A DNA stretch of 55,756 nucleotides from Octopus sinensis. Its lineage: Eukaryota. The stretch lies in NCBI RefSeq assembly GCF_006345805.1, contig NW_021833756.1:1-55756 (forward strand). The letters are read 5' to 3'. Below the pieces are notes generated by a model, which was not told where the DNA came from, ran no database searches, and saw only the letters and a program-made list of their open reading frames with translations. Below, piece after piece: positions 6,812 to 45,306 of the stretch (position 1 is the first letter of the stretch; each line of letters starts with the position of its first letter). Made by a program: the position numbers and the translations under genes.

Positions 6812-6826
6812 CATAGATTTTCATAA

Positions 6827-7735: not shown

Positions 7736-7904
7736 ATTGTGCGTGCGTGTGTGAGCACAGTCCACCTATACCCAAGCTGGTTGCATCGTCTCATAAGAAC
7801 CAGCCGTGAAAGTTCCGGATCACATTAATGAACTCATTTGCATACAAACAATTAGGGCTCCCCTTGAACTTGTCCGGTTAACAAACAGTAGTGTCTGAAT
7901 GGGA

Positions 7905-8044
7905 ATTAGCTTGCTTACCTAACAAATGTTTTCGAGTTCGGTCCCACTGGGTGGAATGTTGGGCAAATGTCTTCTACTATAGTCTCGGGCCGACCAAAGC
8001 CTTGTGAGTGGATTTGGGAGACGGAAACTAAAAGAAGACTGTCG

Positions 8045-8088
<44 letters not shown>

Positions 8089-10579: not shown

Positions 10580-10995
10580 AGGGAAGTAACTCTAGGAGAT
10601 ATTTTCTGCTATCTCCCCAGTGAACAGGTCATGGACTTTTCTCGTTATTTACTCTTTATACTGACGTAGATAAAAGTCCTAGTGTCGATTTGCTCAAGAA
10701 AATTATGTGCTCCAGCATGGGCGCAGTGAAATGACTAAACCAGGAAAAGAGTAAAAGTAAATGTAAGGGAAGTAAATGTGGAAGATTATCTCCCTTTCTA
10801 GAGTTACTCCCCTTGTATATATTATTAGTTATTAACTTATAATATGCAAGGAAAGTAACTCTACAAAGGAAGATAACTCCAAAATCTTCCATAGTTACTT
10901 CCCCGACATATACTGATAATTGCTAAATATACTAGGCAAGGGAAATAACTCTGGAAAGGGAGATAAGTACAAAATCTTCCAGAGTTACTTCCCTT
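10580..10995. repeat. Array of ~55-60-bp imperfect hairpin units (AAGGGAAGTAACTCT...AGAGTTACTCCCCTT). Further arrays at ~8500-8700, 14270-14310, 17320-17730, 19390-19735
   Basis: Each unit has ~15-bp inverted ends. Units occur in both orientations, separated by AT-rich spacers. Confidence 0.8.
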
Positions 10996-11029
10996 ACATG
11001 TGTTTGTGTACGTGAAACTGTTTTTATTC

Positions 11030-13695
11030 GTTAGTTAGTTAGTTAATTTGGCTCAAAAGCAAATAGCAAGGCCATGTAGGGGGACATAGAGTTAAGTACA
11101 GGGTGGTGTTCATGTAAGGAGTTCAGGCCACTTGAGGTCCAGGGAGGCTTTGAACAAAGCGGTCGTCGGCATCTTCACCATCTCGTTTGGCAGCTTGTTC
11201 CACGGATCCGCAACCCGGACGGAGAAAGCTCCTCTCCTTCGATTGAGATGAAATCGTCGCAGGTAGAGCTTTTCGGAATGACCCCGCAGCCGACGCTCCG
11301 GAGCAGGAGTGAAGAACAGCTCTTTCGAGAGGTTACACTTTCCGCTTATGATGTTGTGGGCGAGAATGAGATCACCACGGCGGCGGCGTTTTTCAAGAGA
11401 ATAAAGGTCGAGCGTCCTCAGCCTTTTTTCGTAGGACAAATTTTTGAGACCATGAACCATGCGGGTAGCCAGCCTCTGGACTCTTTCGAGGTGCTGTATG
11501 TCTTTGAGGAGATAAGGAGAAGAGGCTTGAATCCCATACTCCAATATGGGTCTCACCAGCATGACAGAGTGGCAGGAATATGGCTGCTGTGAGGATTCCG
11601 AATGACCGTCGAATCAAAAACAGAATTCCGCGTGCTTTGTTGGCAGCATGGACGCACTGGGCCGAAGGCGAAAAGGAGGAATCTATCAAGATACCCAGGT
11701 CCTTTACCTGATCGGTCCTCTCCAGCAGCAGACGACCCGGCTCGAAATCAAGTTGAGTTGCAGGAGTAGAGCCGACAGGCAGATGACCGCACTTTGACAC
11801 GTTCAGACACAGGTCCCAATCGTTAGACCACTTCCAAATTTGGTGGAGGCATCGACGAAGATCCTCTATACTACCGCGAGGAGCGACCAGTTTGATATCG
11901 TCGGCAAATAGAAGGGTGTGTTGCGTGAGGTCGTCGGGCAAGTCATTTATGAAGACTAAGAACAACAAGGGCCCAAGCACTGAACCTTGAGGCACGCCAC
12001 TGCTCGCACTGGAGACGTCGGACCGCGAACCATTAACTTGAACTTGGAAGGAGCGATCTGAGAGGAAGGCACCAACCCATCGTACAATATCCGGATGGAA
12101 ACTATATGCTTGAAGCTTGACAAGTAGTAGGCGGTTGTTTACCGAGTCAAAATCTTTGGCAAAGTCCAATAAAACGATGTCAACAGCATCACTATCATCG
12201 AGGATGCGCGTCACCAATTCTTCCATTACTAGTAAGTTGGTCAAGCATGATCTCTTCGGCACGAAGCCGTGTTGGGAATCAGTGATCGAGGCTGTGTTTA
12301 GGAGGTGGAGCATCATACTTTTCTTAAGGATGGTTTCGAACATCTTGCTGATTATTGATGTAAGGGAAACCGGTCGGTAGTTAAGCGGGTCTTCGCAGCT
12401 CCCTTTCTTGAAAATTGGGCAGATTATCGCTGTTCTCCAGTCTGCAGGTATAACACCCGTCGCCAATGACATATTGAATAGTCGTGTTAAGGGCTCGCAG
12501 ATGACCGGAGCCAACGCTTTGATAACCCGTGGGTGTATGCCGTCAGGGCCGTGACCCTTGTTGACATCGAGGCCTTGAATAACACGTTTGACTTGGTCCC
12601 GCGTGATGATCAATCGAAGCATTGGAGGTACCGATCTATCAAATGGAGGGGGTTCACGACCATCATCTTGTTTGAAAATAGTTGAAAAAGCCTCGGCAAA
12701 TAATTGACTCTGTTGATAAGGGTCCTCAATCGATACGCCTGTTGAGTCTACCAACGTTGCAATCTGGTTGTTCAAGCGGGAATTCCGCTGGACATGGGCA
12801 AAGAAGGTTTTTGGATTGCTACTGGCATTTGCCGCGATTTTGTATTCATAACTGAAGCGTTCTTTCTTTTCAATTTTCACGGCTCGGTCTCGTTGAGTTT
12901 TTTACACCTCAAAAGCTGCAGTCGAATCCAGATTTTTGAATTCAGCCCAAGCAATATCTCTGAGTCGACGTTCTCGTTTAACCTTCTTCGTCACCCAGGG
13001 CTTGTGTTTCTTCCTCTTGGGAAGTCCAATGGGAACTGCCTGGTCAGTCAAACAGATTACATATGCTTTGAGGGATGACCATAGTTCGTCAACTGAGGAC
13101 AACGTCATCAGGGAACGCCAGTCCAGAAGCGCGGAAGCCTCGGTTAGAATTTCAAGATTAATTGCAGAGAAGACTCTACGTGCCAGCGAAGTAATCGTGG
13201 GCGTGGAAAAAGTTGTGTGCATGACGAACTTCAGGACCTCATGATCACTCTTGGCAAGAGGGGCGCACACAGATACGTCTGACACTGATCTTGGATAGCG
13301 GGAGAATACCAGATCTAGCATAGATGGCTGCTGCCCAGACCGATGCCTTGTCGGATATTCAACATGTTGCGAGAGAAAACAATCTTCAGCCACGTCAAGA
13401 AGGGCCTGGCCGAACCGGGAAGATGTTGTACAAATTGATGCGGGCCAATCGATCGTGGGAGCGTTGAAGTCGCCTAGTACCAAGCAGTCATGCGAAGCTG
13501 AAACGAATCTTATCGCTTCGAGTAGATGAGCATCGTCCTGGGGGTCGGCAAGAGGCGGCCTGTAGACAGCCAACACGGGCAAGCAAAACTCAGATAGGTT
13601 CAGCTTGCAATAGACAGCATCGAATTTGGTTGTAGGTTGAGCATTTGTGGGTAGAATACCGCAGGACGGTTTGTGCTCAGACTTAACATACCCAG
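11030..13695 (-). mobile_element. 5'-truncated CR1-clade LINE (partial APE endonuclease + RT, frameshifted), (AACT)n 3' tail
   Basis: ORF pieces 12902-13582 (YRPP, LGDFNAP, LDLVF, SDH; frame open upstream to ~13690), 11393-12880 (GVPQGSVLGPLLF, FADD) and 11110-11562 (LRGHSEKL..WNKLP). The tail reads GTTAGTTAG at 11030 on the + strand. Confidence 0.95.
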
Positions 13696-14329: not shown

Positions 14330-14560
14330 TCGTTATTTACTCTTTTACTCTCATTTACGTGTTTCAGTCATTTGACTGTGGCCATGTTGCAGCACCACCT
14401 TTAGTCGAGCATATCGACCCCATGATTTATTCTTTGTAGGCCTAGTACTTATTCTATCAGTCTCTTTCGCTGAACCTCTAAGTTATGGGGACGTAAACAG
14501 ACTAGCATCCGTTGTGTAGCAATGTTGGGGGACAAACAGACACACGCACACACGCACACA
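14330..14560 (-). mobile_element. SINE 3' half with (GTAAAAGA)n-type tail
   Basis: TTTCAGTCATTTGACTGTGGCCATG..GCACC.CCTTTAGTCGAGC block shared with the SINEs at 36030 and 53479. Confidence 0.8.
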
Positions 14561-14838
14561 TATATAAACATATATATGACTGGAGTTTTCCAGTTTCCTT
14601 CCACCAAATCCAATCACAAGGCTTTGGTCGGCTTGGGGCTATAGTAGATTTTTCCAACGATGGTGGTGTGTTTTCCTCCCTGTATTTCAGCGGCTCGGCA
14701 GAAAAGAATAAGTGCTGCTGACGATGTGTATATATATATATATATATATATATTTATAAAGATATATCAGATATATTATATATATATATTTATAAAGATA
14801 TATCAGATATATTATATATATATATATAAAGAGAGAGA

Positions 14839-14947
<109 letters not shown>

Positions 14948-15259
14948 AAACATTATATACATATAGATATATGTATATGTGTGTATGTTTCGTTGTCCCC
15001 AAAACCGCTTGACAACCAATGCCGGTGTTTTTTACACTCCATTAACTTATCCGTTCGGGAAAGGCTCGGGGCTATAGTAGATTTTTCAAACGATGCTGGT
15101 GTGTTTTCCTCCCTGTATTTCAGCGGCTCGGCAGAAAAGAATAAGTTAGAATAAATACTAGGCTTAGAAAGAATAAGTGCTGCTGACGATGTGCTCGAAG
15201 AAGATAGATTGGTATCTATATATATATATATATATTTATAAAGATATATCAGATATATA

Positions 15260-17003
15260 TAAACTTAGATAAAATTAGATATGTTTCGACCAAAGATTGG
15301 TCGAGGCCATGTCTAACTTAATAGCACCACCTGATAGGATTATTCGAATCCTGTTTAAGTCAAGTTTTGTTCAAGTAGTGAGTTCTTGTTGGGTGAGTTG
15401 TATCCAATTATGGGTGGCTTATCTGGTATTCTTTGAAGGAATCTATCCAGACTCTGTTTAAACTTGATGGGAACCTTTTCCTCTTTGATCTCTCTTGAGA
15501 CAATGTTAAATAGGGCAGGGCCTGTTGAGGAAAAGAAATTATGTTGCAGTGTACATGTATGTTGTGATCTTGTATTGGGCAGGGGACGTATAGCTCTTGG
15601 TCCAAGTCTTGGATGAACCTTGAAGCTAATGTTTAGGTCGTTTGGGCATAGTTGGCGGCATATTTTCCACATCGTACAAATGATGTACCGCTCACGGCGA
15701 CGCTGGAGGGATTAAAATTTCAAGGCTTTAAGGCGATCCCAATAATCGAGAGCAGCCAGTTTAGTGAGTGCCCTCTGGGGTGACTCAATTCTGGAGATGT
15801 TTTGTCTTGTGTGAGGAGACCACAGTGGGCAGCAGTATTCAAGGTGTGGCCGTACAAAGGAGGAAAAAAGTGGTATGATGACACCTTGATCTCTGGACCG
15901 GAAAGTTCTTAAGATCCAGGAACTCATCCTACGAGCTATATCGACCTTCTTGTTGATGTGTGCACTCCAACTGAGATCGTCATCAACAATTACACCCAGG
16001 TCTCTGATATTGTTAGAGGCTGTGAGCGGTTCCCCTGAAGGAAGAGAGTATGGCTGTTTTAGTGAGGAGTTTCTTCCAAAATGCATCAGCTCAAATTTTC
16101 CCTCGTTCAGTTGCATTTTGTTTCTGTCTGGAGTTGAGTTCTGTCTGGAGTTGAGTTCGGTCTGCTTCTTCATTGACGATTTGCTGGAGTTTGGTGTCAT
16201 CAGCAAATATTTTCACTTTGCAGTAATGTACGACACTGGAAAGGTCGTTTATGTAGATTATGAAGAGTAGCGGACCCAAGACAATCCCCTGGGGGACACC
16301 GCTGGTGACTTATGCTGGGCTTGAGTGGACTCCATCAACTACAACATGTGTTCTATTCGCCAGGAAATACTTAATCCAGTGTAGAACTTTTCCACGGATT
16401 CCAACGTTTGCCAATTTTGAGAGTAGGATGTTATGGTCTACCCTGTCGAACGCTTTACTGAAGTCAAGATATATGACGTCAGAGTTCGAACCTGTTCCCA
16501 AGGCTTTGAGTACATCTTCAATGTAGTGTAAGAGCTGTGTTAGACAGTCCCTGCCACAGCGAAAGCCATGCTGATTTGCATTTAGGAGTTTGTGGGTCTC
16601 CAGGAAGTGAGCCATCCTTGATCTTAACACTCTTTCAAACACTTTGATGATGTGGGAGGTGAGTGAGATTGGGCGATAGTTGAGTGCGAGGGATCTGTTT
16701 CCCTGTTTGAAAACCGGGATGACCGACTGGGATAGAAACTGTTTTGGTATATAACCTGCATCTAACCAATTTCTCCAGAGGTTGGTCAGAGGGACTGCAA
16801 GTTGGTGTTTACATTCCTTCAGGAGACTAGCGGGGAATCTATCAGGGCCTACAGCAGAGTAGTATTTGACCTCATTTATTGCTGCTACGATGTCAGTGGG
16901 AGTGAAGGTTATGTCTGCAATTTTGTGTTGGGAGTCAACTTCGTTCGCTTCTCTTACGTCAATATCAGTGGGAACACTAAAGACAGCAGTATTTTTTCTG
17001 CAA
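15260..17003 (-). mobile_element. 5'-truncated CR1-like LINE (RT region and 3' end), decayed
   Basis: ORF pieces with NYRPISLTSH, YLDFSKAFD, KIFADD, VRPHLEYC. The 3' tail of ~10-bp repeats runs into (TA)n. Confidence 0.92.
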
Positions 17004-17730
17004 TATATATATAGAGAGAAACATGTATATACATATAGATATTTATATATATGTATATGTGTGTATGTTTCGGTGTCCCCAAAACCGCCTGACAACCAAT
17101 GCCGATGTTCGGGAAAAGGAGACCAACAGAATTAATACTAGACTGACGTAGTCCTAGTGTCGATTTGCTCTAGAAAAGGCTGTGCTCCAGCATTGGCACA
17201 GTGAAATGACTAAACAAGGAAAAGAGTAAAAGTGTATGCGTTACGTCTGAACATTGTATTGTAGAGTTAATTAGCTTCCATAATACATTTTGATGATAGT
17301 CGTTATGTAATTAAATGTAAGTGAGGTAACTTTTGAAGATTTCTTAGTTATCTCCCTTTCCAGAGTTACTCCCCTTGAACATTACAATGTAATAATACAT
17401 AATAGTAATTTTATTATATGTAAGGGAAGTAAATCTGGAAGATTTTTTTAGTTATCTCTCTTTCTAGAGTTACCCCCATGGCATATTACTAGTAATAACA
17501 TTTAAGGTAAGTAACTCTACAAGGGAAGATAACTCCAAAATCTTCCAGAGTTACTTCCCTCACATCTAATTAAATTACTATTATGTATTATTAAATTGTA
17601 ATGTTCAAGGGGAGTAACTATAGAAAGGAGAGTAACTATAGAAAGGGTGATAACTAAAAAATCTTCAAAAGTTACCTCCCTTATAATATTTAAGGGAAGT
17701 AACTCTAGAAAGGGAAATAGGTACAAAATT
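15260..17730 (-). repeat. Left arm of a ~2.5-kb inverted duplication (LINE fragment + SINE remnant + hairpin array)
   Basis: Reverse complement of 19371-21870, with the same LINE truncation junction. Arms differ by substitutions and several independent indels. Confidence 0.95.
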
Positions 17731-17987
17731 TTAGGGTTAGGTTGGGTTTAGGGTTTGGGGTTGGGGTTAGGGTTGGGGTTAGGGTTAGAGCTTAGGGTTA
17801 GGGTTAGGGTTAAGGGTTTAGGGTTAGGGGTTAGGGTTAGGGTTGGGGTTGGGGTTAGGGTTAGGGTTAGGGTTTGGTTTAGGGTTAAGGGTTAGGGTTA
17901 GGGTTAGGGTTAGAACGGTTAGGGTTAGGGTTAGGGTTGGGTTAGGGTTAGGGTTAGGGGTTAGGGTTAGGGTTAGGGGTTAGGGTT

Positions 17988-18019
<32 letters not shown>
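17731..18019 (+). repeat. Interstitial telomeric tract (TTAGGG)n with variants, ~290 bp
   Basis: TTAGGG with TTGGGG, TTTAGGG, TTAAGGG variants. A further short telomere-like patch lies at ~18205-18238. Confidence 0.97.
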
Positions 18020-18313
18020 TCTCGGGAATTGGTGGGGTCTCGGGAATTGGTGGGGTCTCCGGAATTGGTTGGGCACAGGAAGGGGTCTCGCTTGTCACAG
18101 GGATGAGGGGCTCACATGGTCAGGGTTAGTCTCTAGAAGTGGGGTCACAGATGGGGTCTCGGGTGGTCACAGAAGTGGTCTCGGGGGTTCAGTGTTACAG
18201 AAGGGGTTCGGGTTAGGGGTTAGGGGTAGAGTTAGGGCTCAATTTCCATTGAAATACTCTTTCTTTGCTTCAAATAATTTTGAAAATAATAAAATTTTTG
18301 CTTCATTTTTCAG

Positions 18314-18423
18314 ACATCAACGAGTGTTTAAGGAATCCTTGTCGTTATGGTGCCATATGTCAGAATTACCTAGGTTCCTACCGTTGTGCGTGCAAACCAG
18401 AATTCGATTACATCGACCCCAGC
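18314..18423 (+). pseudogene. Truncated calcium-binding EGF-like exon: (D)INECLRNPCRYGAICQNYLGSYRCACKPEF
   Basis: Pyrimidine tract + CAG acceptor at 18311-18313, phase 1. Matches the D-I-N-E-C..C..C-x-N..G-S-Y-x-C-x-C cbEGF pattern. The sixth Cys is missing where SINE-like sequence (TTCGATTACATCGACCCC..GGCGGAATTTGAACTCAGAAC) begins, and the frame then stops. Confidence 0.8.
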
Positions 18424-18486
18424 ACGTAACTGGTACTTATTTAATCGACCCCGGTATGACCCCTCGGCGGAATTTGAACTCAGAAC

Positions 18487-18524
<38 letters not shown>

Positions 18525-19127
18525 GACATTGTTACCTTGATAACCTTGTACCAATATGTCTTGTTGAGAACTAATATAACACACGCACACACATATAAAC
18601 ACACGCATGACAATACATAAAGACATTCTTTCTTGTTTAATGTGTTTATATGTACATATACATAAGAATATGAACTCACTCGTGAATAGTGAATTGATTT
18701 CAATCTTTCTAAATTAGAATTCAATAAAGGAAGCCATATACGAATCAATGTATAATAAACTATTGACACTCGCACTTGTCGCCAGTATAAATATATAGAC
18801 TGTTTTTTTATTATATATACATCGACACAATACACACACGTATGAGTATACATTCTGTTTCACTTTTTTGTTTCAGGAACATAAATTTTATTTCATTTTT
18901 TCTTTGTTTTTTTAAAATCCATTATGTAATTTTACTCGGATTTATAAAGATATAAATAACAATGTCTTATAGTTTTCTTGTTTCTTAGCTATATTTTTTA
19001 TATTTCTCTCTTGAAATAGTTTCTTTGTTATGTTTATAACAACACACATCTTTTATATTATTGTTAATATTGTTAAGGTTGTTGCATTTATTTCTTATTG
19101 TTGCGTATTTCGCAGCTATTTTTTTAG

Positions 19128-19267
19128 GAGTTGATACAACTGAACTGAAAATTGATGATGAGTCTATTGACGCTGTAAAACAAGTCTACCTGATGCTTTA
19201 CGAATGGTTCAAAAATTGCGACCCAGAAACACGGACACACGCAACATTAAGTGCATCTCTTGAAGAA
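19128..19267 (+). pseudogene. Truncated Death-domain-like exon: (G)VDTTELKIDDESIDAVKQVYLMLYEWFKNCDPETRTHATLSASLEE
   Basis: TTTTTTTAG acceptor at 19126-19127, phase 1. Resembles the LG..EI......EQ.Y.ML..W......AT...L..AL helices of Death domains (judged by eye). Runs directly into CCCTAA repeats. Confidence 0.6.
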
Positions 19268-19370
19268 CCCTTAACCCCAACCCCTAACCTTAAACACTAA
19301 CCCTAACCCTAAACACTTAACCTTAAACCCTAACCCCAACCTTAACCCTAAACCTAACCCTAAACCCTAA
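19268..19370 (-). repeat. Interstitial telomeric tract (CCCTAA)n, degenerate, ~100 bp
   Basis: CCCTAA with CCCCAA, CCTTAA, CCCTAAA variants. Orientation is opposite to 17731-18019. Confidence 0.92.
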
Positions 19371-21863
19371 TTGTAACGTAATAACATGTAAGGGAAGTAA
19401 CTCTGGAAAATTTTGCACCTATTTCCCTTTCTAGAGTTACTTCCCTTGAATATTATAAGTTAATAATACGTAAAATTTTATTAGATGTAAGGGAGGTAAC
19501 TCTTGAAGATTTTTTAATTATTTCCCTTTCTAGAGTTACTCCCTCTTGCATATTATGATTAATTAAATATGCAAGGTAAGTAACTCTACGAAGGAAGATA
19601 ACTTTAAAATCTTCCAGAGTTACTTCCCTTACATCTAATTAAATTACTATTATCTATTGTTAAATTATAATATTCAAGGGGAGTAACTCTAGAAAGGGAG
19701 ATAACTAAAAATCTTCAAAAGTTACCTCCCTTACATTTAGTTACATGACAACTATCATCAAAATGTATTATGGAAGCTAATTAACTCTACAATACAATGT
19801 TCAGACGTAACGCATACACTTTTACTCTTTTCCTTGTTTAGTCATTTCACTGTGCCAATGCTGGAGCACAGCCTTTTCTAGAGCAAATCGACACTAGGAC
19901 TTTTATCTACGTCAGTCTAGTATTAATTCTGTTGGTCTTCTTTTCCCGAACGGATAAGTTAACAGAGTGTGAAAAACATCGGCATTGGTTGTCCAGCGGT
20001 TTTGGGGACACCGAAACATACACACATATACATATATATAAATATCTATATGTATATACATGTTTCTCTCTATATATATATTGCAGAAACAATACTGCTG
20101 TCTTTAGTGACTCCCAACACAAAATTGCAGACATAACCTTCACTCCCACTGGCATCGTAGCAGCAATAAATGAGGTCAAATACTACTCTGCCGTAGGCCC
20201 TGATAGATTCCCCGTTAGTCTCCTGAAGGAATGTAAACACCAACTTGCTGTCCCACTGACCAACCTATGGAGGAATTCATTAGATGCAGGTTATATACCA
20301 AAACAGTTTCTATCCCAGTCAATCATCCCGGTTTTCAAACAGGGAAACGGATCCCTCGCACTCAACTATCGCCCAATCTCACTCACCTCCCACATCATCA
20401 AAGTGTTTGAAAGAGTGTTAAGATCAAGGATGGCTGACTTCCTGGAGACCCAGAAACTACTAAATGCAAATCAGCATGGCTTTCGCTGTGGCAGGGACTG
20501 TCTAACACAGCTCTTACACCACATTGAAGATGTACTCAAAGCCTTGGGAACAGGTTCGAACTCTGATGTCATATATCTTGACTTCAGTAAAGCGTTCGAC
20601 AGGGTAGACCATAATATCCTACTCTCAAAATTGGCAAATGTTGGAATCCGTGGAAAAGTTCTACACTAGATTAAGTATTTCCTGGCGAATAGAACACATG
20701 TTGTAGTTGATGGAGTCCACTCAAGCCCAGCAAAAGTCACCAGCGGTGTCCCCCAGGGGACTGTCTTGGGTCCGCTACTCTTCATAATCAACATAAACGA
20801 CCTTTCCAATGTCGTAGATTACTGCAAAGTGAAAATATTTGCTGATGACACCAACTCCAGCAAATCGTCAATGAAGAAGCAGACCGAACTCAACTCCAGT
20901 CTGATCTATATGCTGTGAGTCAATGGGCAGACAGAAACAAAATGCAACTGAACGAGGGAAAATTTGAGCTGATGCATTTTGGAAGAAACTCCTCACTAAA
21001 ACAGCCATACTCTCTTCCTTCAGGGGAACCGCTCACAGCCTCTAACAATATCAGAGACCTGGGTGTAATTGTTGATGACGATCTCAGTTGGAGTGCACAC
21101 ATCAACAAGAAGGTCGATATAGCTCGTAGGATGAGTTCCTGGATCTTAAGAACTTTCCGGTCCAGAGAACAAGGTGTCATCATATCACTTTTTTCCTCCT
21201 TTGTACGGCCACACCTTGAATACTGCTGCCCACTGTGGTCTCCTCACACAAGACAAAACATCTCCAGAATTGAGTCACCCCAGAGGGCACTCACTAAACG
21301 CATTGAAGGCATGGCTGCTCTCGATTATTGGAATCGCCTTAAAGCCTTGAAACTTTACTCCCTCCAGCGTCGCCGTGAGCGGTACATCATTTGTACGATG
21401 TGGAAAATATACCGTCAACTTTGCCCAAACGACCTAAACATTAGCTTCAAGGTTCATCCAAGACTTGGACCACGGGCTATACGTCCCCTGCCCAATTCAA
21501 GATCACAACATACATGTACACTGCAGCACAATTTCTTTTCCTCAACAGGCCCTGCCCTATTTCACATTGTCCCGAGAGAGATCAAAGAGGAAAAGGATCC
21601 CATCAACTTTAAACAGAGTCTGGATAGATTCCTTCAAAGAATACCAGATAAGCCACCCATAATTGGATATAACTCACCCAACAAGAACTCACTACTTGAA
21701 CAAAACTGGATACAACTCACCCAACAAGAACTCACTACTTGAACAAAACTTGACTTAAACAAAACTTGACTTAAACAGGATTCGAATAATCCTATCAGGT
21801 GGTGCTATTAAGTTAGACATGGCCTGGACCAATCTTTGGTCGAAACATATCTAAGTTTATCTA

Positions 21864-21870
<7 letters not shown>
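19371..21870 (+). repeat. Right arm of the inverted duplication
   Basis: Reverse complement of 15260-17730. Confidence 0.95.
20081..21870 (+). mobile_element. 5'-truncated CR1-like LINE (RT region and 3' end), with premature stop and frameshift
   Basis: ORFs 19932-20669 and 20915-21742 (LNYRPISLTSH, YLDFSKAFD, RPHLEYC, SLQRRRERY). Tail (TCTAAGTTTA)2 then (TA)n. Confidence 0.93.
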
Positions 21871-21904
<34 letters not shown>

Positions 21905-21919
<15 letters not shown>

Positions 21920-22021
21920 CATATACAACATGAGAAAATGGAGAAATACATCTAAATCATTAATCAATTATCAGATAATACTTTATTAAACCCTGTCTCA
22001 ATTTGTATATATATACATATA

Positions 22022-22087
<66 letters not shown>

Positions 22088-23055
22088 CAGTTACGCAATG
22101 GCGTCGATATAATCGCCTTAATCCGTATGTCTGTCTTTGTTTGTCCCCTCTGTGTTTAGCCTCTTATGGGTAGTAAAGAAATAGGTATTTCGGCTGCCGC
22201 TACGCTCTGAGTTCAAATTCCGCCGAGGTCGACTTTGCCTGCTATTTCTAGCATATGGATATCCTTCTTGAAGGCCTGATCGATTTGCTTGACTAAATGC
22301 GGTGCTCCAGCATGGCCACAATTAAATGACTGAAACAAGTAAAATAAAAGAACATATATATATATATATATGTTTTGATTTTCCTTGTTTCAGTCATTTG
22401 ACTGTGGCCATGCTGGAGCACCGCATTTAGTCGAGCAAATCAATCCCAAGACATTATCTTTAAGCCTAGCCGTTCTTGTCAAGCGATGTTGGAGGGTGAG
22501 GGGAAACAGACACACACACTCACACACACATATATGTATACATTTATATACGATGGGCTTCTTTCAGTTTCCATCTACCAAATCTATTCATACATACACA
22601 CACACAAACACACACACATATGTGTGTTTTCATTTCTGTGTCTGCGTGCGCGCGAGTTTCCAGTTCATTGTTTGTGCGTGTGTGTGTGTGTGCGCGCGCT
22701 AGTGTATGCGTGTGGGCGTGCGTGTGGGCGTGTGTGTGTGAGTGTGTAACTGTGTATTTTCATTTGTGTGTGTGTGTGTTTGTCCGTATGTGTGTGTGCG
22801 TGTGTGAGTGTGAGTGTGTCTGAGTATTTTCATTTCTGTGTGTGTTTATGACTGGTTTTAATTATGTGTGCGTGTGTATTTTCGTTTCTGTGTGTGAGTG
22901 TTTCAGTGTGTAACTGTGCATTTTCAATTTTGTGCATGAATGTGTGTGAGTGTTTGTGTGTGTGTCGTTACGCACGCACGCACTGGTGTCGAAAGGCACA
23001 AACGCACACATACACACACGCAATTGAAAATACAGTCACACACGCACAGACACGC

Positions 23056-23090
<35 letters not shown>

Positions 23091-23106
23091 CAAAAACACA
23101 CACACG

Positions 23107-23140
<34 letters not shown>

Positions 23141-23348
23141 CATTTCAAAATAGAAAATTGCCCATTAACAGGTAATTTTTACATGCTAGAAATAGCAGCC
23201 AAACTTTGCCACGATCCTTCATTTTCTAGCAAATTTTCAAGTCCATGAAAAATAAAAACCTTTATCTAGTTAAATATCTTGTTAAATATATACAACTACA
23301 TATATATATACACACACACACACACACAAATATATATATACATACTTG

Positions 23349-23394
<46 letters not shown>

Positions 23395-23563
23395 AATATA
23401 TATATATATATATATATACATACTTATGGAGAAATACATCTAAATCAAATATCAATTATCAGATAATACTTTATTAAACCCTATATCAATTGTATATATA
23501 TATACATATATATATATTATATATATATTTATATTTATATATATATATATACATATATATTAT

Positions 23564-23590
<27 letters not shown>
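21905..23590. repeat. ~1.5-kb SINE/microsatellite composite unit, repeated at ~27655-28780 and partly at ~46060-46710
   Basis: Shared GGAGAAATACATCTAAATC..TCAATTATCAGATAATAC (~21937, 23427, 27677) and CACTGGTGTCGAAAGGCACAAACGCAC (22981, ~28700, ~46635). Confidence 0.88.
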
Positions 23591-23595
<5 letters not shown>

Positions 23596-26500
23596 GGGGG
23601 GCAAAGGAAAATGATTGCGTCTCTCATAGCCTCTCCTCTCCAGGTGTAATGATCGCTGCAGAACTTCTACCTGGCTGCGCCTTGTGGAAAGTTCTTGCTT
23701 ATGGCCTCTCCTGCACTACTGTGTCCACAGCAGCACCTTCACGCGGTACCCCCTGTTCTCACTGAGCCTGCTGTGTGGCGCGACCGGGTGCTTGGCGGTA
23801 TAACCGGGTGGGCAGACTGGGCTCGTTAGCCTTGGTTGACAGCCAGTCTAGGAGAAGGAAAACTCTGACTCCAAACCCTCGCTCCGCTGCCTTGCGGATG
23901 CTCTTGGGAGAGGGAAAGGCTATGGGAGTAAACCCAGACAGAAAATCCGGAGTGGAGCCCTGAAGGCGGTAGGGTGTCGAATCTCGACCCTTTTCCGGCA
24001 ACTCCTGCAGCCAACCAGACTCCAAACGTACTGCACTGCATTCCTTTGGATTATGTCTGGGGGCCCGAGAGGGAGATTCTGGTGTCTGGGCAGCCCAGTG
24101 TCTTCGTTCCTACCGCCCAGGCTTGCGCCATGGAGAAACTACTCCATCGATGGAACAAGCTGAGATGGCAGTTACGAGTTTTAAGCCAGGGTGAATTGGC
24201 GTAATCCCGGGCGCTACGGGTCTCTAACGGTGGGAGGGATCATTGAAGTCCCACTGGTCAGCTACCGCCCGCCTTAAGCTGGGCAGCCCCCGGCCAATAA
24301 TGGTGCTAAGCCGCCACAGACTGCCCGCTTCAATGGGTGCTTGGAGCTAGGACAAAATCTGAAAAGCAGACTGAAAACCCTGCACCAGCAAACAAAGGAA
24401 AAACAAATACCCAGTCTCCAGTCTTGCGACTGGCCACCTGGAATGTCAGGACCATGTGCCCTGGCATCATTGACGATCTACGACAGATGAACGACAGTAG
24501 GAAGACAGCAGTCATCAACACCGAATTGAAAAGGCTGAACATCGACATAGCGGCGCTGCAAGAGACCAGGCTCGCCGCAGACGGCATGCTACGGGAGAAG
24601 GACTACACCTTCTACTGGCAGGGGAGACCCGTCGAGGAGGCCCGCCAGCATGGCGTGGGGTTTGCCGTGAGGAACAGCTTGCTCCCCATGGCGATCCCTC
24701 CTTCAAATGGCTCAGAGCGCATCCTCACTCTTGGCCTTGCAACATCAACGGGGAAGGTAAACATAATTAGTGCTTATGCCCCAACACTCCACTCTCCTCA
24801 GAAAATAAAAGACCGGGTCTATGAGGAGCTCGGCGCCACCATCAGCCAGATACCAGGGTCGGAGCCCATCTTCCTTCTGGGCGACTTCAACGCAAGGGTG
24901 GGATGATTCGATCATGGGGCATGGCCAGACTGCCTTGGACGCTTTGGCGTGGGGAAGATGAATGAGAATGGCCAGAGACTGTTGGAGCTTTGCTCTTACC
25001 GGAAACTCTGCGTTACCAACACATTCTTCACGACTAAGCCACAACACCGGGTCTCATGGAGGCACCCAAGGTCCGGACACTGGCACCAACTGGACATGGT
25101 CATCACCCGGCGAGCCCACCTCGGCAGTGTGCTTCTCACACGCAGCTACCATGGTGCTGACTGTGATACAGACCACTCTCTGGTGTGCAGTAGGGTCCGA
25201 TTGGCCCCAAAGAAAATCCGCCGTCCCGTAGGGAAAAGCCGCCCACGCATCAACACCGCCAGGACAACCAACCCCGACCTCCGCTCGGAATTCACCAACC
25301 GCATGGAGGAGGCCCTTAAAGATCACGCAGCCACGTCATCGAGGAGAGATGGCAGCTTATTCGCGACACCACTTGCAGAATAGTCATGTCATCCCTAGGA
25401 AAGAGGGAGCGGAGAAATCAAGACTGGTTTGAGGCTCACCTGCCTGAGATGGAGCCTGTCATTGCTGCCAAGAGGGAAGCACTGGTCAACTATAAGCGCG
25501 ACCCATCAGAAAAGAACCTGGCTACTCTAAGAACAGCCAGAAGTGACGCCCAGAGGACGGCCAGACGTTGCGCCAACATCTACTGGCAGAACCTATGCCA
25601 GAACATCCAGTGCTGTGCTGACAGTGGTAACGTGAAAGGATGTACGAGGGGATGAAGAAAGCATTCAGGCCCACTGTCAGCAAGGTTGCTTTACTGAAGT
25701 CCAGGGATGGCGAGGTCATCAAGGACCAAGCGAAGCAGATAGAGAGGTGGGTCGAGCATTACCAGAACCTCTACTCCACTGAGAATGTGGTCACCAGGTC
25801 TGCCCTCGCCGGCATTCCTGCTCTGCCTGTCATGGAGGAGCTTGACCTGCCTCCAACAAAGGAAGAACTGAGCAAAGCAATTGACTCACTCGCTCGGGGC
25901 AAGGCACCAGGGCAAGACGGCATCCCCGCAGAAGTCATCCAGTGCGGGAAGCCAGCCCTTCTGGGCCATCTCCACGAGCTGCTCTGTCAGTGCTGGGAGG
26001 AGGGCTCTGTCCCTAAGGATATGCGTGACGCAAACATCATCACACTGTATAAAAACAAAGGGGACAGAAGCGACTGTAATAATTACAAGGGCATATCCCT
26101 GCTCAGCACTGTCGGTAAGGCATTTGCCAGGGTGGTCCTGAAGAGGTTGCAAATGCTTGCAGAGCGTGTGTACCCCGAGTCTCAGTCTGGCTTTAGGGCA
26201 GAGAGGTCTACAATCGACATGATCTTCTCACTCAGGCAGCTTCAAGAAAAGAGTCGAGAACAGAGACAGCCCCTATACGTGGCCTTCATCGACCTGGCTA
26301 AGGCGTTCGACTCAGTCAGCAGGGAGGGGCTGTTTGCGCTCCTGGGTAGGATATGTTGCCCTCCCAGACTGCTGAAACTCATCACCTCCTTTCACGATAC
26401 GGTATGCAGGGAACAGTGCAGTTTGACGGATTGCCCTCGGAGTCGTTCGCCATCCAGAGTGGAGTGAAACAGGATTGCGTTCTGGCGCCGACGCTCTTCG

Positions 26501-27644
26501 GAATTTTCTTCTCCCTTGTCCTGTCCTATGCCTTCAGAACGTCCGACGACGGAGTGTTCCTCCACACCAGGGCTGATGGTGGGTTGTTCAATCTTGCGCG
26601 CCTCAGAGCTAAGACCAAAGTCCGTCAGGTGCTGATCAGAGAGATCCTCTTTGCTGACGATGCCGCCCTAACATCACACAACCAGCCGGGTCTCCAGAGG
26701 CTGTTCAGCTCCCTGGCGGATGCCTGCCAAGAGTTCGGCCTTACCATCGGCCTGAAAAAGACAGAGATCATGGGCCAGGACGTCGGAGGGGTCCCCAGCA
26801 TCAGTGTCGGCGACCACAGCTTGCAGGTGGTGAACGAGTTCACTTACCTGGGATCGACGGTCTCCAGCAGCCTGTCCCTCGAGCCGGAGCTGAACAGACG
26901 GATTGGGAGGGCTGCTGCTGCCATGGCTATGCTCTCCAGGAGAGTGTGGGAAAACAACATGCTCACAATAACCACCAAGATCGCAGTGTACCGAGCCTGC
27001 GTGCTGAGCACCCTACTCTACGGCAGCGAGAGCTGGACAACATACACCCGGCAGGAATGCCGCCTCAGCGGCTTCCACATGCGGTGTCTTCGACGGATCC
27101 TTGGCATCTCCTGGAAGGACCCAGTACCAAACGGAGTCATCCTGGAACAGACTAATATGCCAAGCATGCATGCCCTCCTCGTGCGGAGACGACTGCGCTG
27201 GCTCGGACACGTCTGCCGCATGCAGGACGGTCGCATGCCTAAAGACATCCTGTACAGCAAACTCACCACGGGATCCCGACCAAGGGACGTCCACAGCTAC
27301 GATACAGGGATGTGTGCAAGCGCGACCTGAGGACTGCCAACATCTGTGTGGACACGTGGGAGGTAACAGCTGCTGACCGCTCTGCCTGGCGTCGGACAGT
27401 GAGGAAAGGCGTTTCCATGGCTGAGGAAAGGAGAGCACAGCCGTGGTCGGACAGGCGGGACAGGAGGAGGACAACTGCAGCAAAACCCCACACGTACCCA
27501 TCGATGTTCGTGTGCAGCAACTGTACCAGGGACTGCCACTCTAGAATGGACTGTTCAGTCACAGCAGACGCAGCACATCATCAAAGTAGGCCCCACACTT
27601 GGCGCAACCCATTGTCTATCAAGACAGACGGGGAGAAGAGAAGA
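23596..27644 (+). mobile_element. Near-full-length RTE-clade LINE (single APE-RT ORF, decayed), ~0.75-kb 5' UTR, (GAAGA)n-like tail
   Basis: LATWNVRT, ALQETR, LGDFNARVG*..GKMNENGQRLL (in-frame stop at 24904), FIDLAKAFD, GVKQDCVLAPTLF, LFADDAAL, RRLRWLGHVCRM and a C-terminal CSNC knuckle, spread over ORF pieces 24337-27600. Confidence 0.95.
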
Positions 27645-27744
27645 GATATATATACATACATATACAACATGAGAAAATGGAGAAATACATCTAAATCAAA
27701 TATCAATTATCAGATAATACTTTATTACACCCTATATCAATTTG

Positions 27745-27799
<55 letters not shown>

Positions 27800-29118
27800 C
27801 AGTTACGCAATGGGGTCGATATAATCGCCTTAATCCGTATGTCTGTCTTTGTTTGTCCCCTCTGTGTTTAGCCTCTTGTGGGTAGTAAAGAAATAGGTAT
27901 TTCATCTGCCGCTACGCTCTGAGTTCAAATTCCGCCGAGGTCGACTTTGCCTGCTATTTCTAGCATATGGACAGCCTTCTTGAAGGCCTGATCGATTTGC
28001 TTGACTAAATGCGGTGCTCCAGCATGGCCACAGTCAAATGACTGAAACAAGTAAAATAAAAGAACATATATATATATATATATATGTTTTGATTTTCCTT
28101 ATTTCAGTCATTTGACTGTGGCCATGCTGGAGCACCGCATTTAGTCGAGCAAATCAATCCCAAGACATTATTTTTAACCCTAGCGGTTCTTGTCAAGCGA
28201 TGTTGGAGGGGGGAGGGGGTAAACAGACACACACACACACTCACACACACATATATGTATACATTTATATACGATGGGCTTCTTTCAGTTTCCATCAACC
28301 AAATCTATTCATACATACACACACACAAACACACACACATATGTGTGTTTTCATTTCTGTGTCTGCGTGCGCGCGTGTTTCTAGTTCATTACTTGTACGT
28401 GTGTGTGTGTGTGTGTGCGCGCGCTAGTGTATGCGTGTGAGCGTGTGTGTGTGAGGGTGTAACTGTGTATTTTCCTTTTTTGTGTGTGTGTGTGTGTGGT
28501 GTTTGTCCGTATGCATGTGTGCATGTGTGAGTGTGAGTGTGTGTGAGTATTTTCATTTCAGTGTGTATGTGTGACTGTTTTTATTTATGTGTGCGTGTGT
28601 ATTTTCGTTTCTGTGTGTGAGTGTTTGAGTGTGTAACTGTGCATTTTCAATTTTGTGTGTGTATGCTTGTGGGCGTTTGTGTGTGTGTCGTTACGCACGC
28701 ACTGGTGTCGAAAGGCACAAACGCACACATACACACACACAATTGAAAATACAGTCACACACGCACACACCTTTTCCCTGAGTTGCTTAGCAACGGGTAA
28801 TAATAGAGAAGAATAGTTTTATATTGAGAGAGAGAGAAACTCATATGTTATATAGTGAGTTAAATACAGACAGACAGACAGACAGACAGAGAGAGGTAGA
28901 CAGAGAGAGAGAAGAAGGCCTTAAGTACTGATGAAATTAAATGGGGTGAATGGGGTGGGTCAGCAAAAGATACAGAAAATTCAGGTATCCTGTCAACAGA
29001 AACTTTGCATTTTCAATTCTGTCTCAGATACAATCTGACTTTACAATGGCAAACGAAATGAAATGTATATTTCAAGTCAGCGATAATCGGAAGATTTTAA
29101 AAATACACGCAGACAAAC

Positions 29119-29191
<73 letters not shown>

Positions 29192-29706
29192 CACACACAC
29201 ACACGCACACACGCACACACACACACACACTTGAAAATACAGTCACACACGCACACACCTTTTCCCTGAGTTGCTTAGCAACGGGTAATAATAGAGAAAA
29301 ATAGTTTTATATTGAGAGAGAGAGAAACTCATATGTTAGATAGTGAGTTAAATACAGACAGAGAGAGAGCGTAAAAGACAGAGAGAGAGAGAGACAGACA
29401 GACAGAGAGAAGAAGATCTTAAGTAACTTTCTGATGAAATTAAATGGAGTCGTTCAGTTTGTCTGCAAAAGATACAATCGAACGCTACAGTAGCTAAACC
29501 TCTTTCGCTTCATTTTTCGGTTACAAAACGAAATGTCTATTTCATATGTCACCAAAAATCGGAAGATTTTAAAGATACACGCACACAAACACACACACAG
29601 ACACACACACGCACACGCACGCGCACGCGCACACGCACACACACACACAGACACACACACACACACACACAACACACACACACACACACACACATACATA
29701 CATACA

Positions 29707-29737
<31 letters not shown>

Positions 29738-29950
29738 GTATATATATTTCAAAATAGAAAATTACCCTTTAACATGCAATTTTAACATGCTAGAAATAGC
29801 AGCAAAGATTGCTACGATCCATTATTTTCTGGCAAATTTTGAAGTCCATGAAAAATAAAGACCTTTATCTTTTTATATATGTATATATATATACATCTAC
29901 ATATATATATATACACACACACACATATGTATAGATATATAGATATATAG

Positions 29951-30002
<52 letters not shown>

Positions 30003-30044
30003 CATAAATATATAACTATATAAATATATATATAAATATATATA

Positions 30045-30122
<78 letters not shown>

Positions 30123-30126
30123 TATA

Positions 30127-36431: not shown

Positions 36432-36571
36432 TATATTCATTTTTCTGCATTGAACACAGCTGAGACGCCGTACACTCACACATGTATGTGCATGTATACA
36501 CATAAATATATATGTTTATATATGCAATAGAAATATGCACGCATATGTATGTATAAGTTTATATATATATA

Positions 36572-39428: not shown

Positions 39429-39466
<38 letters not shown>

Positions 39467-45203: not shown

Positions 45204-45262
<59 letters not shown>

Positions 45263-45265
45263 ATA

Positions 45266-45306
<41 letters not shown>

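What the first reader, a model, noticed from the sequence alone, without database searches (positions are those of the whole stretch)
15260..21870. Head-to-head telomere junction inside a 2.5-kb inverted duplication: candidate fossil end-to-end chromosome fusion
Seen: arm-(TTAGGG)n-1.25-kb spacer-(CCCTAA)n-inverted arm. Each telomeric tract is oriented as a chromosome end for its own arm. The arms share the same LINE truncation and SINE junction but have independent indels (left keeps ~40 bp at ~16935-16976; right keeps segments near 19955-19975 and 21300), so this is not a simple read foldback. Established: inverted telomere tracts with mirrored subtelomeric DNA are the signature of telomere fusions, and fusions often capture filler DNA. 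Inference: two related chromosome ends fused here, trapping a gene fragment.
Basis: partly seen in the sequence, partly recalled or inferred. Interest (0 to 1): 0.8.

Follow-up and report, generated by a model that had tools for sequence, protein, structure and literature searches.

The report
Inverted duplication around facing telomere-like repeats
A 6.6-kb mirror-image duplication with telomere-type repeats facing each other is really in the sequence, but what can be tested here points to a local DNA-repair accident in a transposon-rich region rather than a proven fusion of two chromosome ends.

Summary
The anatomy is confirmed. Left arm 15253-17730, a degenerate (TTAGGG)n tract 17731-18019, a 1.25-kb spacer, a degenerate (CCCTAA)n tract 19266-19370 and the inverted right arm 19371-21876. 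Outside an internal hairpin element the arms differ by about 3% substitutions. Each arm has its own derived indels, polarised with an outgroup LINE, so this is not a raw-read foldback.

The arms are ordinary interspersed repeats: a 5'-truncated LINE, a SINE part and a foldback MITE-like element that also occurs at 10735-11000 without telomere repeats. The left LINE sits in its native context. The right arm's homology stops exactly at the LINE 3' tail, inside a (TA)n that belongs to an unrelated repeated block. No mirror homology extends beyond 2.5 kb.

The most economical reading is one local template-switch or fold-back repair event. It copied the left arm and part of its interstitial telomeric tract in inverted orientation, with junctions at AACCC/GGGTT and in (TA)n.

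A true end-to-end fusion is not excluded, because the two tracts share no variant order and start 36 nt apart. It needs at least two events, though, and no synteny or read data were reachable. Interest is modest.

The parts
15213..15261 (.). (TA)n with the motif TTTATAAAGATATATCAGATATAT, the native target of the left LINE insertion and outer flank of the left arm
   Evidence: TRF. The same motif occurs twice in the paralogous unit at 14754-14813. The empty-site join is colinear with 14729-15062.
15253..16995 (-). Left arm, part 1: 5'-truncated non-LTR (LINE) element ending in the 3' tail (ATCTAAGTTT)2. Reading frame broken.
   Evidence: Pfam RVT_1 E 1.5e-15; ORFs; same tail in the related full-length LINE at 30844-35092.
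16996..17309 (+). Left arm, part 2: TA/TG microsatellite plus the 3' part of a SINE-like repeat (to about 17232), then 80 nt of unique sequence
   Evidence: 88-91% match to the SINE-like copy at 14942-15062; alignment.
17310..17730 (.). Left arm, part 3: foldback MITE-like element made of ~50-nt hairpin units, cut 22 nt short of its end by the telomere-like tract
   Evidence: DNA fold -120 kcal/mol, z -18.8; unit map ><><><>><>; third family copy at 10735-11000.
17731..18019 (+). Left telomere-like tract, degenerate (TTAGGG)n, G strand pointing right
   Evidence: 46.7 copies, 84% matches. Variants TTGGGG, TTTAGGG, TTAGGGG, TTAAGGG.
18019..18240 (+). G-rich minisatellite (units GTCTCGGGAATTGGTGGG and GGTCACAGAAGGGGTCTCGGGT) ending in three TTAGGGG-like units
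   Evidence: TRF; sequence.
18241..18403 (+). Intron-like polypyrimidine tract with AG acceptor, then a truncated calcium-binding EGF exon (18312-18403). The only EGF exon in the window.
   Evidence: Pfam EGF_CA E 6.7e-9; six-frame motif scan.
18404..18523 (-). 85-nt internal fragment of a second SINE type lacking both ends, followed by a perfect (TAA)12
   Evidence: Sequence; TRF. Assignment to a SINE rests on comparison with the copies at 22085-22200 and 27797-27900.
18524..19265 (.). AT-rich unique sequence. The last 125 nt are an open frame after an AG, but no protein family or homologue supports it as an exon.
   Evidence: No self-match in the window; no homologue; no Pfam hit.
19266..19370 (-). 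Right telomere-like tract, more degenerate, G strand pointing left. The junction with the spacer reads GAAGAACCC|TTAACCCC, so AACCC is shared by both sides.
   Evidence: (74% matches).
19371..19741 (.). Right arm, inner part: 14 nt (TTGTAACGTAATAA) plus a complete foldback element ending CATGTAAGGGAAGTAACTCTGG
   Evidence: Three-way alignment with the copy at 10735-11000 shows the element's true end; unit map ><><><><.
19742..21876 (+). Right arm, outer part: unique 80 nt, SINE part, microsatellite, the same 5'-truncated LINE, ending at the LINE 3' tail
   Evidence: Pfam RVT_1 E 4.1e-13.
21868..21925 (.). (TA)29 outer junction of the right arm. It is the microsatellite that natively precedes the repeated block starting at 21907 (copies at 23396 and 27646).
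   Evidence: TRF; BLAST 21907-23048 ~ 27646-28767 at 90% and 23396-23546 ~ 27646-27795.
14729..15062 (+). Paralogous uninterrupted unit (TA-rich motif, (GA)n, microsatellite, SINE 3' part). It shows what the left LINE's insertion site looked like before insertion.
10735..11000 (+). Third copy of the foldback element, next to a SINE 3' end and with no telomere repeats

Best explanation
This is a local inverted duplication made by one break-repair event, not two chromosome ends. The ancestral locus read: left flank, LINE/SINE/foldback element, an interstitial telomere-like tract, G-rich minisatellite, a decayed gene fragment, and further right a (TA)n followed by the repeated block that now starts at 21907. 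A break occurred between the gene fragment and that (TA)n. The 3' end on the (TA)n side annealed to the self-complementary (TA)n beside the left LINE's 3' tail, about 4-6 kb away on the same molecule. It copied the left arm inwards as far as the telomere-like tract. The new strand, ending ...GGGTT, then paired with the AACCC at the other broken end (19261-19265) and the break was sealed. The equivalent event could have run the other way as a fold-back primed in the tract. The result is arm, (TTAGGG)n, spacer, (CCCTAA)n, inverted arm. Afterwards both copies diverged by about 3% and gained their own indels. The hairpin units of the foldback element exchanged sequence, and the left tract junction lost 36 nt. 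SHOWN: the anatomy; that both copies evolved independently; that the left arm is native and the right arm is derived; that the right boundary falls at the LINE tail/(TA)n; that the arms are ordinary repeats. INFERRED: the break site, the order of template switches, the use of microhomology, and that the left tract was already interstitial.
For: (1) The left LINE is in native context. The TA-rich motif on its 3' side (15213-15261) and the (GA)n/microsatellite/SINE part on its 5' side (from 16996) are contiguous in the neighbouring paralogous unit 14729-15062. (2) The right arm's homology ends within about 10 nt of the LINE 3' tail. The left-flank motif is absent there. What follows is (TA)29 plus a block whose other copies (23396, 27646) are also preceded by an AT microsatellite or a LINE 3' end. 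(3) Both junctions lie in sequence able to give microhomology: the palindromic (TA)n, and AACCC/GGGTT at 19261-19270. (4) Proximity, inverted orientation and a unique spacer are the hallmarks of fold-back or template-switch duplications (PMC7467729 abstract, PMC4689423 abstract). (5) There is a precedent for head-to-head telomeric stretches with inverted duplications arising locally at a repaired break (PMC7215372, section 2.5 and Fig. 4a legend). (6) No inverted homology between the flanks beyond the arms, apart from dispersed repeats. (7) Arm homology runs up to the left tract: the last 41 nt (17690-17730) match 19447-19408 with one mismatch. The left junction is then explained by a 36-nt deletion with TT microhomology. 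(8) Outgroup polarity shows derived changes in both arms. Right: a 39-bp deletion and a 59-bp duplication. Left: a 12-bp deletion and a 14/17-bp replacement. The structure is therefore old and real.
Against: If the right tract were a copy of the proximal left tract made when the arms were copied, the two should share their order of variant repeats. They do not beyond chance: unit-shuffle nulls reach the observed alignment score in 120/2000 and 1467/2000 trials. The tracts begin at different positions relative to the arm, 36 nt apart, which also fits two independent telomere additions. Both tracts are far more degenerate (16-26% off consensus) than the 3% arm divergence. The ancestral empty site has not been seen, so break site and microhomology use are untested. 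The exact coincidence of the right boundary with a LINE 3' end fits an RNA-mediated copy at least as well.
Confidence: 0.5

Rival explanations
1. True fossil end-to-end fusion. The 2.5-kb terminal block of one chromosome end was first copied onto a second, broken end by break-induced replication started in (TA)n ('telomere capture'). Later the two ends, each with a short variant-rich telomere, joined head to head and captured about 1 kb of filler.
For: Each tract is oriented as a terminus of its own arm. The tracts show no shared variant order and start at different points, one inside the foldback element and one 14 nt beyond its end, as expected for independently added or maintained telomeres. 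Degenerate head-to-head arrays are what the human 2q13 site shows (PMC7215372, PMC9413910). The spacer is a patchwork of short unrelated pieces (EGF exon piece, internal SINE fragment, (TAA)12), as filler often is. The window is rich in satellites and duplicated blocks, like a subtelomere.
Against: It needs at least two rare events plus filler capture, where one local event suffices. The arms are ordinary dispersed repeats, and the foldback element occurs elsewhere without telomere repeats. Mirror homology stops at 2.5 kb. Arm identity of 97% implies a recent event, while reported octopod karyotypes are uniform at 2n=60 (PMC5646656 abstract); the organism itself was not identified by any tool. 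No synteny, chromosome position or reads could be examined.
Confidence: 0.2
2. RNA-mediated copy. A read-through transcript of the minus strand began in or beyond the left telomere-like tract and ended at the LINE's own 3' end. LINE machinery reverse-transcribed it into the nearby (TA)n (5' transduction). This gave the right arm, 5'-truncated within the CCCTAA run.
For: The right arm ends exactly at the LINE 3' tail. All LINE 3' ends examined in the window abut TA-rich microsatellites, so (TA)n looks like the preferred target. AACCC microhomology at the 5' junction is typical of LINE 5' joins (established knowledge of L1 junctions, not tested here).
Against: No target-site duplication is recognisable. 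Landing 1.3 kb from the source in inverted orientation would be a coincidence. The template RNA would contain a 380-nt near-perfect hairpin. The tract mismatch problem of the best explanation applies here as well.
Confidence: 0.1
3. Assembly artefact: a misjoin or chimeric path in a long-read assembly created the inverted arrangement.
For: The window also holds a spacer-less 4.4-kb palindrome (47445-51817) and a smaller one (45216-46062), and many 1-bp indels between repeat copies. Both outer and inner junctions lie in low-complexity sequence. No reads could be checked.
Against: The arms differ by 117 substitutions and only four 1-bp indels, and each has derived indels by outgroup polarity. 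They are therefore two real, separately evolving copies. A 1.25-kb unique spacer and unequal tracts do not fit a read foldback. The junction repeats (105 bp, 58 bp) are too short to mislead long-read overlap. The tracts are degenerate, not a present-day terminal array.
Confidence: 0.12
4. A composite, telomere-repeat-bearing mobile element with 2.5-kb terminal inverted repeats.
For: Long inverted termini with an inner region carrying a captured gene fragment resemble foldback or Pack-type elements. A hairpin-unit element forms the inner part of each arm.
Against: The arms are nested fragments of three unrelated elements. No transposase is present and the reverse transcriptase is broken. No second copy of the unit occurs in 55 kb. 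No target duplication is visible. The telomere repeats are internal rather than terminal.
Confidence: 0.03

Closest known systems
Human 2q13 'fusion' interstitial telomeric sequence
   Same: Head-to-head degenerate (TTAGGG)n/(CCCTAA)n with inverted paralogous DNA on both sides (PMC7215372, PMC9413910).
   Different: At 2q13 the arrays abut (my recollection of Ijdo et al. 1991, not checked here). The flanks are subtelomeric duplicons shared with present chromosome ends, and ape synteny shows two chromosomes. Here a 1.25-kb spacer separates the tracts, the arms are a strict 2.5-kb mirror of ordinary transposon fragments, and neither synteny nor paralogy to real ends could be tested.
ITS loci formed at repaired breaks with inversions and inverted duplications (horse/human survey, PMC7215372 Fig. 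4a)
   Same: A local event produced two head-to-head telomeric stretches together with inverted duplications of flanking sequence.
   Different: Those duplications were 38 and 53 bp around a 286-bp inverted segment. Here the arms are 2.5 kb, the spacer is not shown to be inverted, and no ITS-less orthologue is available.
Foldback inversions and replication-based inverted duplications (yeast foldback GCRs, PMC7467729; ODIRA, PMC4689423)
   Same: Inverted arms around a unique spacer; junctions at short inverted or palindromic sequence.
   Different: Those are experimental or somatic events, usually followed by further rearrangement or triplication. Here the event is germline-fixed, duplicated only once, and returns to unrelated sequence after 2.5 kb.
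Telomere-ITS primed DNA synthesis before fusion in C. elegans telomerase mutants (bioRxiv 10.1101/2022.09.04.506531)
   Same: Telomere-like tracts serve as priming sites for copying adjacent DNA, with template shifts at 1-2 nt of homology, irrespective of ITS orientation.
   Different: That process starts from a critically short real telomere and ends in a chromosome fusion. Nothing here shows that a real telomere took part.
Subtelomeric-type ITS
   Same: [quoted passage not shown] The window also has a 6.8-kb satellite and repeated blocks.
   Different: The position next to a real telomere is unknown, and no terminal array is in the window.

Membership tests
Fusion-type ITS (ancestral telomere-telomere fusion) | Two telomeric arrays in head-to-head orientation | tested here: met
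Fusion-type ITS (ancestral telomere-telomere fusion) | Arrays abut or are separated by a short junction only | tested here: not met
   1246 nt lie between the tracts (18020-19265), including about 1 kb of non-telomeric DNA.
Fusion-type ITS (ancestral telomere-telomere fusion) | Flanks are subtelomeric DNA paralogous to present chromosome ends | not testable with these tools
   No genome of this or a close species was reachable. The best protein hit to the arm LINE is 70% identical, the exact look-up was empty, and two metagenome scans were empty. What was seen: the arms are common transposon fragments.
Fusion-type ITS (ancestral telomere-telomere fusion) | The two flanks map to the ends of two chromosomes in relatives | not testable with these tools
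   No synteny data.
Fold-back / template-switch inverted duplication | Two highly similar arms in inverted orientation around a unique spacer | tested here: met
   The spacer has no other match in the window.
Fold-back / template-switch inverted duplication | One arm in native context, the other bounded by novel junctions | tested here: met
   Left LINE flanks are contiguous in the paralogous unit 14729-15062. The right arm is bounded by the (TA)n of an unrelated block and by the spacer.
Fold-back / template-switch inverted duplication | Microhomology at the novel junctions relative to the ancestral sequence | tested here: inconclusive
   AACCC/GGGTT and (TA)n are present at the junctions, but the ancestral sequence is unknown.
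Fold-back / template-switch inverted duplication | The copied segment is colinear with the source right up to the junction, telomere-like tract included | tested here: inconclusive
   The arm is colinear to the last 41 nt (1 mismatch). The order of tract variants is not shared beyond chance.
Short ITS inserted by telomerase at a repaired break | An ITS-less orthologous locus in a related species | not testable with these tools
   No related genome.
Subtelomeric-type ITS | Degenerate units mixed with other tandem and interspersed repeats | tested here: met
Subtelomeric-type ITS | Location next to a real terminal array | not testable with these tools
   No terminal array in the window. The window starts in a satellite and ends in a LINE.
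LINE 5'-transduction retrocopy | Copy ends at the LINE's own 3' tail next to a target-type sequence | tested here: met
LINE 5'-transduction retrocopy | Target-site duplication flanking the copy | tested here: not met
   The flanks ...CTTGAAGAACCC and (TA)29 CATACATATAC share nothing. A duplication hidden inside (TA)n cannot be excluded.
Telomere-repeat-bearing transposon | Telomeric repeats at the element's outer termini; several copies with target duplications | tested here: not met
   The repeats are internal. There is one copy in 55 kb and no duplication at 15253/21876. Genome-wide copy number is not testable.
Long-read foldback chimera | Near-identical arms, no spacer, differences of the sequencing-error type | tested here: not met
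   117 substitutions against four 1-bp indels; derived indels in both arms; a 1.25-kb spacer.

The most novel reading that the evidence does not exclude
The locus is the scar of a real germline telomere crisis. Two chromosome ends, or sister ends, carried the same 2.5-kb terminal block, each capped by its own short variant-rich telomere. They joined head to head with captured filler. This would mark a recent chromosome-end fusion or a breakage-fusion-bridge remnant in what looks, from my memory of its SINE families, like a cephalopod genome, a group whose karyotypes are considered stable.
Probability: 0.2. Interest if true: 0.65.

Novelty: new member of a known kind. Interest (0 to 1): 0.3.

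Why it matters
If it is local, as argued, it is a large and cleanly resolved natural example of an inverted duplication whose two junctions sit in a telomere-like tract and in a (TA)n microsatellite. That makes it useful as an illustration. It also shows that 'head-to-head telomere repeats plus mirrored flanks' is not by itself proof of chromosome fusion, which matters for automated screens of new chromosome-scale assemblies. If it were a real fusion scar, it would date and place a karyotype change and would be worth cytogenetic follow-up.

Tried and rejected
(1) I tested whether the right tract is a recognisable copy of the proximal left tract, using local alignment against nulls made by shuffling repeat units. 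The result is not significant either way. A ~95-nt higher-order period in the left tract is only marginally better than the 6-nt period, so I did not use it.

(2) Two-stage history (old inner inverted repeat, younger outer extension), suggested by the identity drop at about 17340. Rejected. The drop is confined to the hairpin units. Left 17504-17619 matches right 19573-19688 in direct orientation at 92%, which indicates exchange among subrepeats. The last 41 nt before the left tract are again 97.5% identical.

(3) My guess that 19141-19265 is a death-domain exon. No homologue and no Pfam hit even at E<=10. Dropped.

(4) More exons of an EGF gene in the flanks: none.

(5) Finding other genomic copies or the organism. 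The protein search with the arm ORF gave a best hit of 70% identity on a 934-bp contig of GCA_024449705.1. An exact look-up of the helicase ORF found nothing. Two metagenome pattern scans found nothing. These negatives say nothing about copy number in the source genome.

(6) Rfam scan of the window: no family.

(7) Inserted linear DNA with telomeres, or a Tel-1/TBE1-like element: the repeat polarity is the opposite of what that needs.

Full report
OBSERVATION.

- The 12-mer TTAGGGTTAGGG occurs 17 times in the window, against none in 100 shuffles. Sixteen occurrences lie on the + strand in 17792-18015 and one on the - strand at 19301.
- Tandem Repeats Finder gives a 6-bp array at 17731-18019 (46.7 copies, 84% matches) and a more degenerate C-strand array at 19266-19370 (74% matches).
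- In both tracts the G-rich strand runs 5'->3' towards the centre.
- The inverted arms are 15253-17730 and 19371-21876.
- The differences between the arms are 65 transitions, 52 transversions and only four single-base indels.
- I used the related full-length LINE at 30844-35092 as an outgroup. By that polarity the right arm has a derived 39-bp deletion and a derived 59-bp tandem duplication. The left arm has a derived 12-bp deletion and a derived 14/17-bp replacement.

The two arms are therefore separate copies that have evolved independently. They are not the two strands of one read.

WHAT THE ARMS ARE. Read from the outside in, each arm has four parts.

- A 5'-truncated non-LTR retrotransposon. 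It has a reverse-transcriptase domain (Pfam RVT_1, E 1e-13 to 1e-15), broken frames and a 3' tail (ATCTAAGTTT)2. The related full-length element has the same kind of tail.
- A TA/TG microsatellite and the 3' part of a SINE-like repeat. Other copies lie at 14942-15062 and 10650-10760.
- 80 nt of unique sequence.
- A ~380-nt foldback, MITE-like element built of ~50-nt hairpin units (folding energy -120 kcal/mol, z = -18.8).

A third copy of the foldback element lies at 10735-11000, with no telomere repeats next to it. It defines the element's true end...CCAGAGTTACTTCCCTTACATG. So the arms are ordinary interspersed repeats. Nothing marks them as subtelomeric.

THE IDENTITY PROFILE. Identity is 97-100% from 15253 to about 17340 and falls to 74-91% inside the foldback element. 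I first considered an older inner inverted repeat with a younger outer extension. Two results argue against it. The inner half of the left element (17504-17619) matches the outer half of the right element (19573-19688) in direct orientation at 92%, better than its positional counterpart at 82%. And the last 41 nt before the left tract (17690-17730) match 19447-19408 with one mismatch. The low identity is best explained by sequence exchange among the hairpin units plus an extra unit in the left copy. Arm homology at the usual ~97% therefore reaches the left tract.

The left tract follows ...AAAATT directly. The right arm continues for 36 nt (the end of the element plus TTATTACGTTACAA) before its tract starts. 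This fits either a 36-nt deletion with TT microhomology in the left copy, or two independent additions of telomere repeats.

WHICH ARM IS THE ORIGINAL. The left flank is a short tandem array of units of the form [TA-rich stretch with TTTATAAAGATATATCAGATATAT] - (GA)n - microsatellite - SINE 3' part. The left LINE interrupts the third unit. The TA-rich motif is on its 3' side (15213-15261), and the (GA)n/microsatellite/SINE part is on its 5' side (from 16996). Joining those two flanks gives a sequence colinear with the uninterrupted neighbouring unit 14729-15062. The left arm is therefore in the place where its LINE originally inserted.

The right arm is different. Its homology stops within about 10 nt of the LINE tail and the left-flank motif is absent. 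What follows is (TA)29 and a block (21907-23048) that recurs at 27646-28767 (90%), with its start also at 23396-23546. In those other copies the block is preceded by an AT microsatellite or by the 3' end of an unrelated LINE. So the right arm is a derived copy placed against the microsatellite of an unrelated block. Beyond the 2.5-kb arms the flanks share nothing in inverted orientation except dispersed repeats.

THE CENTRE. After the left tract come the following pieces.

- About 185 nt of G-rich minisatellite and three more TTAGGGG-like units, ending at 18240.
- A polypyrimidine tract, an AG and a truncated calcium-binding EGF exon (EGF_CA, E 6.7e-9). It is the only EGF exon in the window.
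- An 85-nt internal fragment of another SINE type that lacks both ends, joined directly to the exon.
- A perfect (TAA)12, then about 600 nt of AT-rich unique sequence.
- A 125-nt open frame with no homologue or family.

The junction with the right tract reads GAAGAACCC|TTAACCCC, so AACCC can be assigned to either side.

MOST LIKELY MECHANISM (inference). One break-repair event accounts for all the boundaries.

- A break occurred between the gene fragment and the (TA)n of the block at 21907.
- The (TA)n 3' end is self-complementary. It annealed to the (TA)n beside the left LINE tail and copied the left arm inwards into the telomere-like tract.
- The nascent ...GGGTT end paired with AACCC on the other broken end and the gap was sealed.
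- The same product arises if the AACCC end folded back into the tract and the strand returned through (TA)n.

This is the known class of fold-back or template-switch inverted duplications (PMC7467729, PMC4689423). A survey of horse and human ITS loci documented a local event that created head-to-head telomeric stretches together with inverted duplications (PMC7215372, section 2.5 and Fig. 4a). In C. elegans, telomere-like tracts act as priming sites for copying adjacent DNA, with template shifts at 1-2 nt of homology (bioRxiv 10.1101/2022.09.04.506531). I give this reading about 0.5.

WHAT SPEAKS AGAINST IT, AND THE RIVALS. The main difficulty is that the two tracts do not look like copies of one another. 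Their order of variant units is no more similar than in unit-shuffled controls. Both are also much more degenerate than the arms are divergent. Fast turnover of tandem repeats, or repeated template slippage during the copying, could explain this. Two independently maintained telomeres could explain it too.

A real fusion therefore remains possible (about 0.2). It requires a prior transfer of the 2.5-kb block to a second chromosome end, for example telomere capture started in (TA)n. It then requires the fusion itself and then the capture of about 1 kb of filler. None of its defining tests could be run: paralogy to present ends, synteny in relatives, chromosomal position.

An RNA-mediated copy, meaning 5' transduction by the LINE whose 3' end bounds the arm, explains the exact outer boundary well. 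It does not explain the proximity or the inverted orientation, and no target duplication is visible (about 0.1).

A misassembly cannot be excluded without reads. The window contains another, spacer-less 4.4-kb palindrome. However, the independent derived indels, the unique spacer and the short junction repeats argue against it (about 0.12).

A composite transposon is unlikely (about 0.03).

COMPARISON WITH WHAT IS KNOWN. By sequence organisation the tracts fit the 'subtelomeric' or 'short' ITS classes of PMC7215372. They fit the 'fusion' class only in orientation. TTAGGG is the one experimentally determined cephalopod telomere motif (Adachi et al. 2014, as cited in PMC13218726 and PMC6160780). 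My impression that the SINE families are octopus-like comes from memory, and no tool tested it.

The kind of structure is known. This is a new, unusually large and well-resolved instance.

LIMITS. No genome of this or a closely related species could be reached.

- The best protein match to the arm's LINE is 70% identical.
- The exact look-up of a window ORF returned nothing.
- The two metagenome pattern scans returned nothing.

Copy number of the arm, chromosomal position, synteny and read support are all untested, and they are what would decide the matter.

VERDICT. The fusion interpretation is only partly supported and is less economical than a local inverted duplication. Interest is modest (0.3). 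The fusion reading, if later shown, would deserve about 0.65.

Noticed in passing
window 1-6813: A 34-bp satellite (CCTCGTTCACACATCATGCGTCCATACAAACAAG, about 200 copies, 90-94% matches) that runs off the start of the window. It is followed at 6826-7217 by a 15-bp G-rich minisatellite (AATTCAGGGGCAGGT x26).
   Followed up: no
window 47445-51817: A second inverted duplication: a spacer-less 4.4-kb palindrome centred near 49660 in CA/TA low-complexity sequence. The arms differ by 3.5% substitutions plus 22 single-base indels. It is either a natural palindrome or a long-read artefact.
   Followed up: partly
window 45216-46062 (also 36255-36440, 53696-53880, 7886-8061): A family of ~178-bp units arranged in short direct and inverted arrays. 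One array forms an 850-bp palindrome.
   Followed up: no
window 37214-39427 and 41567-42681 (- strand): An intact 570-aa PIF1-like helicase ORF (Pfam PF05970, E 1.5e-62) with further ORFs upstream, Helitron-like. It is split by a LINE copy (39444-41111) that is 97.7% identical to the LINE at 11024-12684.
   Followed up: partly
window 30844-35092 (- strand): An apparently full-length LINE of the same family as the arm LINE (about 72% nucleotide identity). It has an AP-endonuclease domain and a glutamine-rich first ORF, and served here as outgroup.
   Followed up: partly
window 23396-27795: A different LINE (24337-27640, + strand) flanked by a 150-bp direct repeat (23396-23546 and 27646-27795, 90%). 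That is far longer than a usual target duplication.
   Followed up: no
window 21907-23557; 27646-30749; 46237-47344 with 51893-54028: A block of about 1-3 kb present three times in direct orientation (80-96% identity), differently interrupted by a LINE and by the 4.4-kb palindrome. The right half of the window is thus a decayed large tandem duplication.
   Followed up: partly
window 15253, 27640, 30790: The LINE 3' ends examined all abut TA-rich microsatellites. This suggests a target preference of these elements for (TA)n.
   Followed up: no
window 14560-15262: The left flank is a short tandem array of [TA-rich motif, (GA)n, microsatellite, SINE 3' part] units, that is, a SINE-derived local tandem repeat.
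   Followed up: partly
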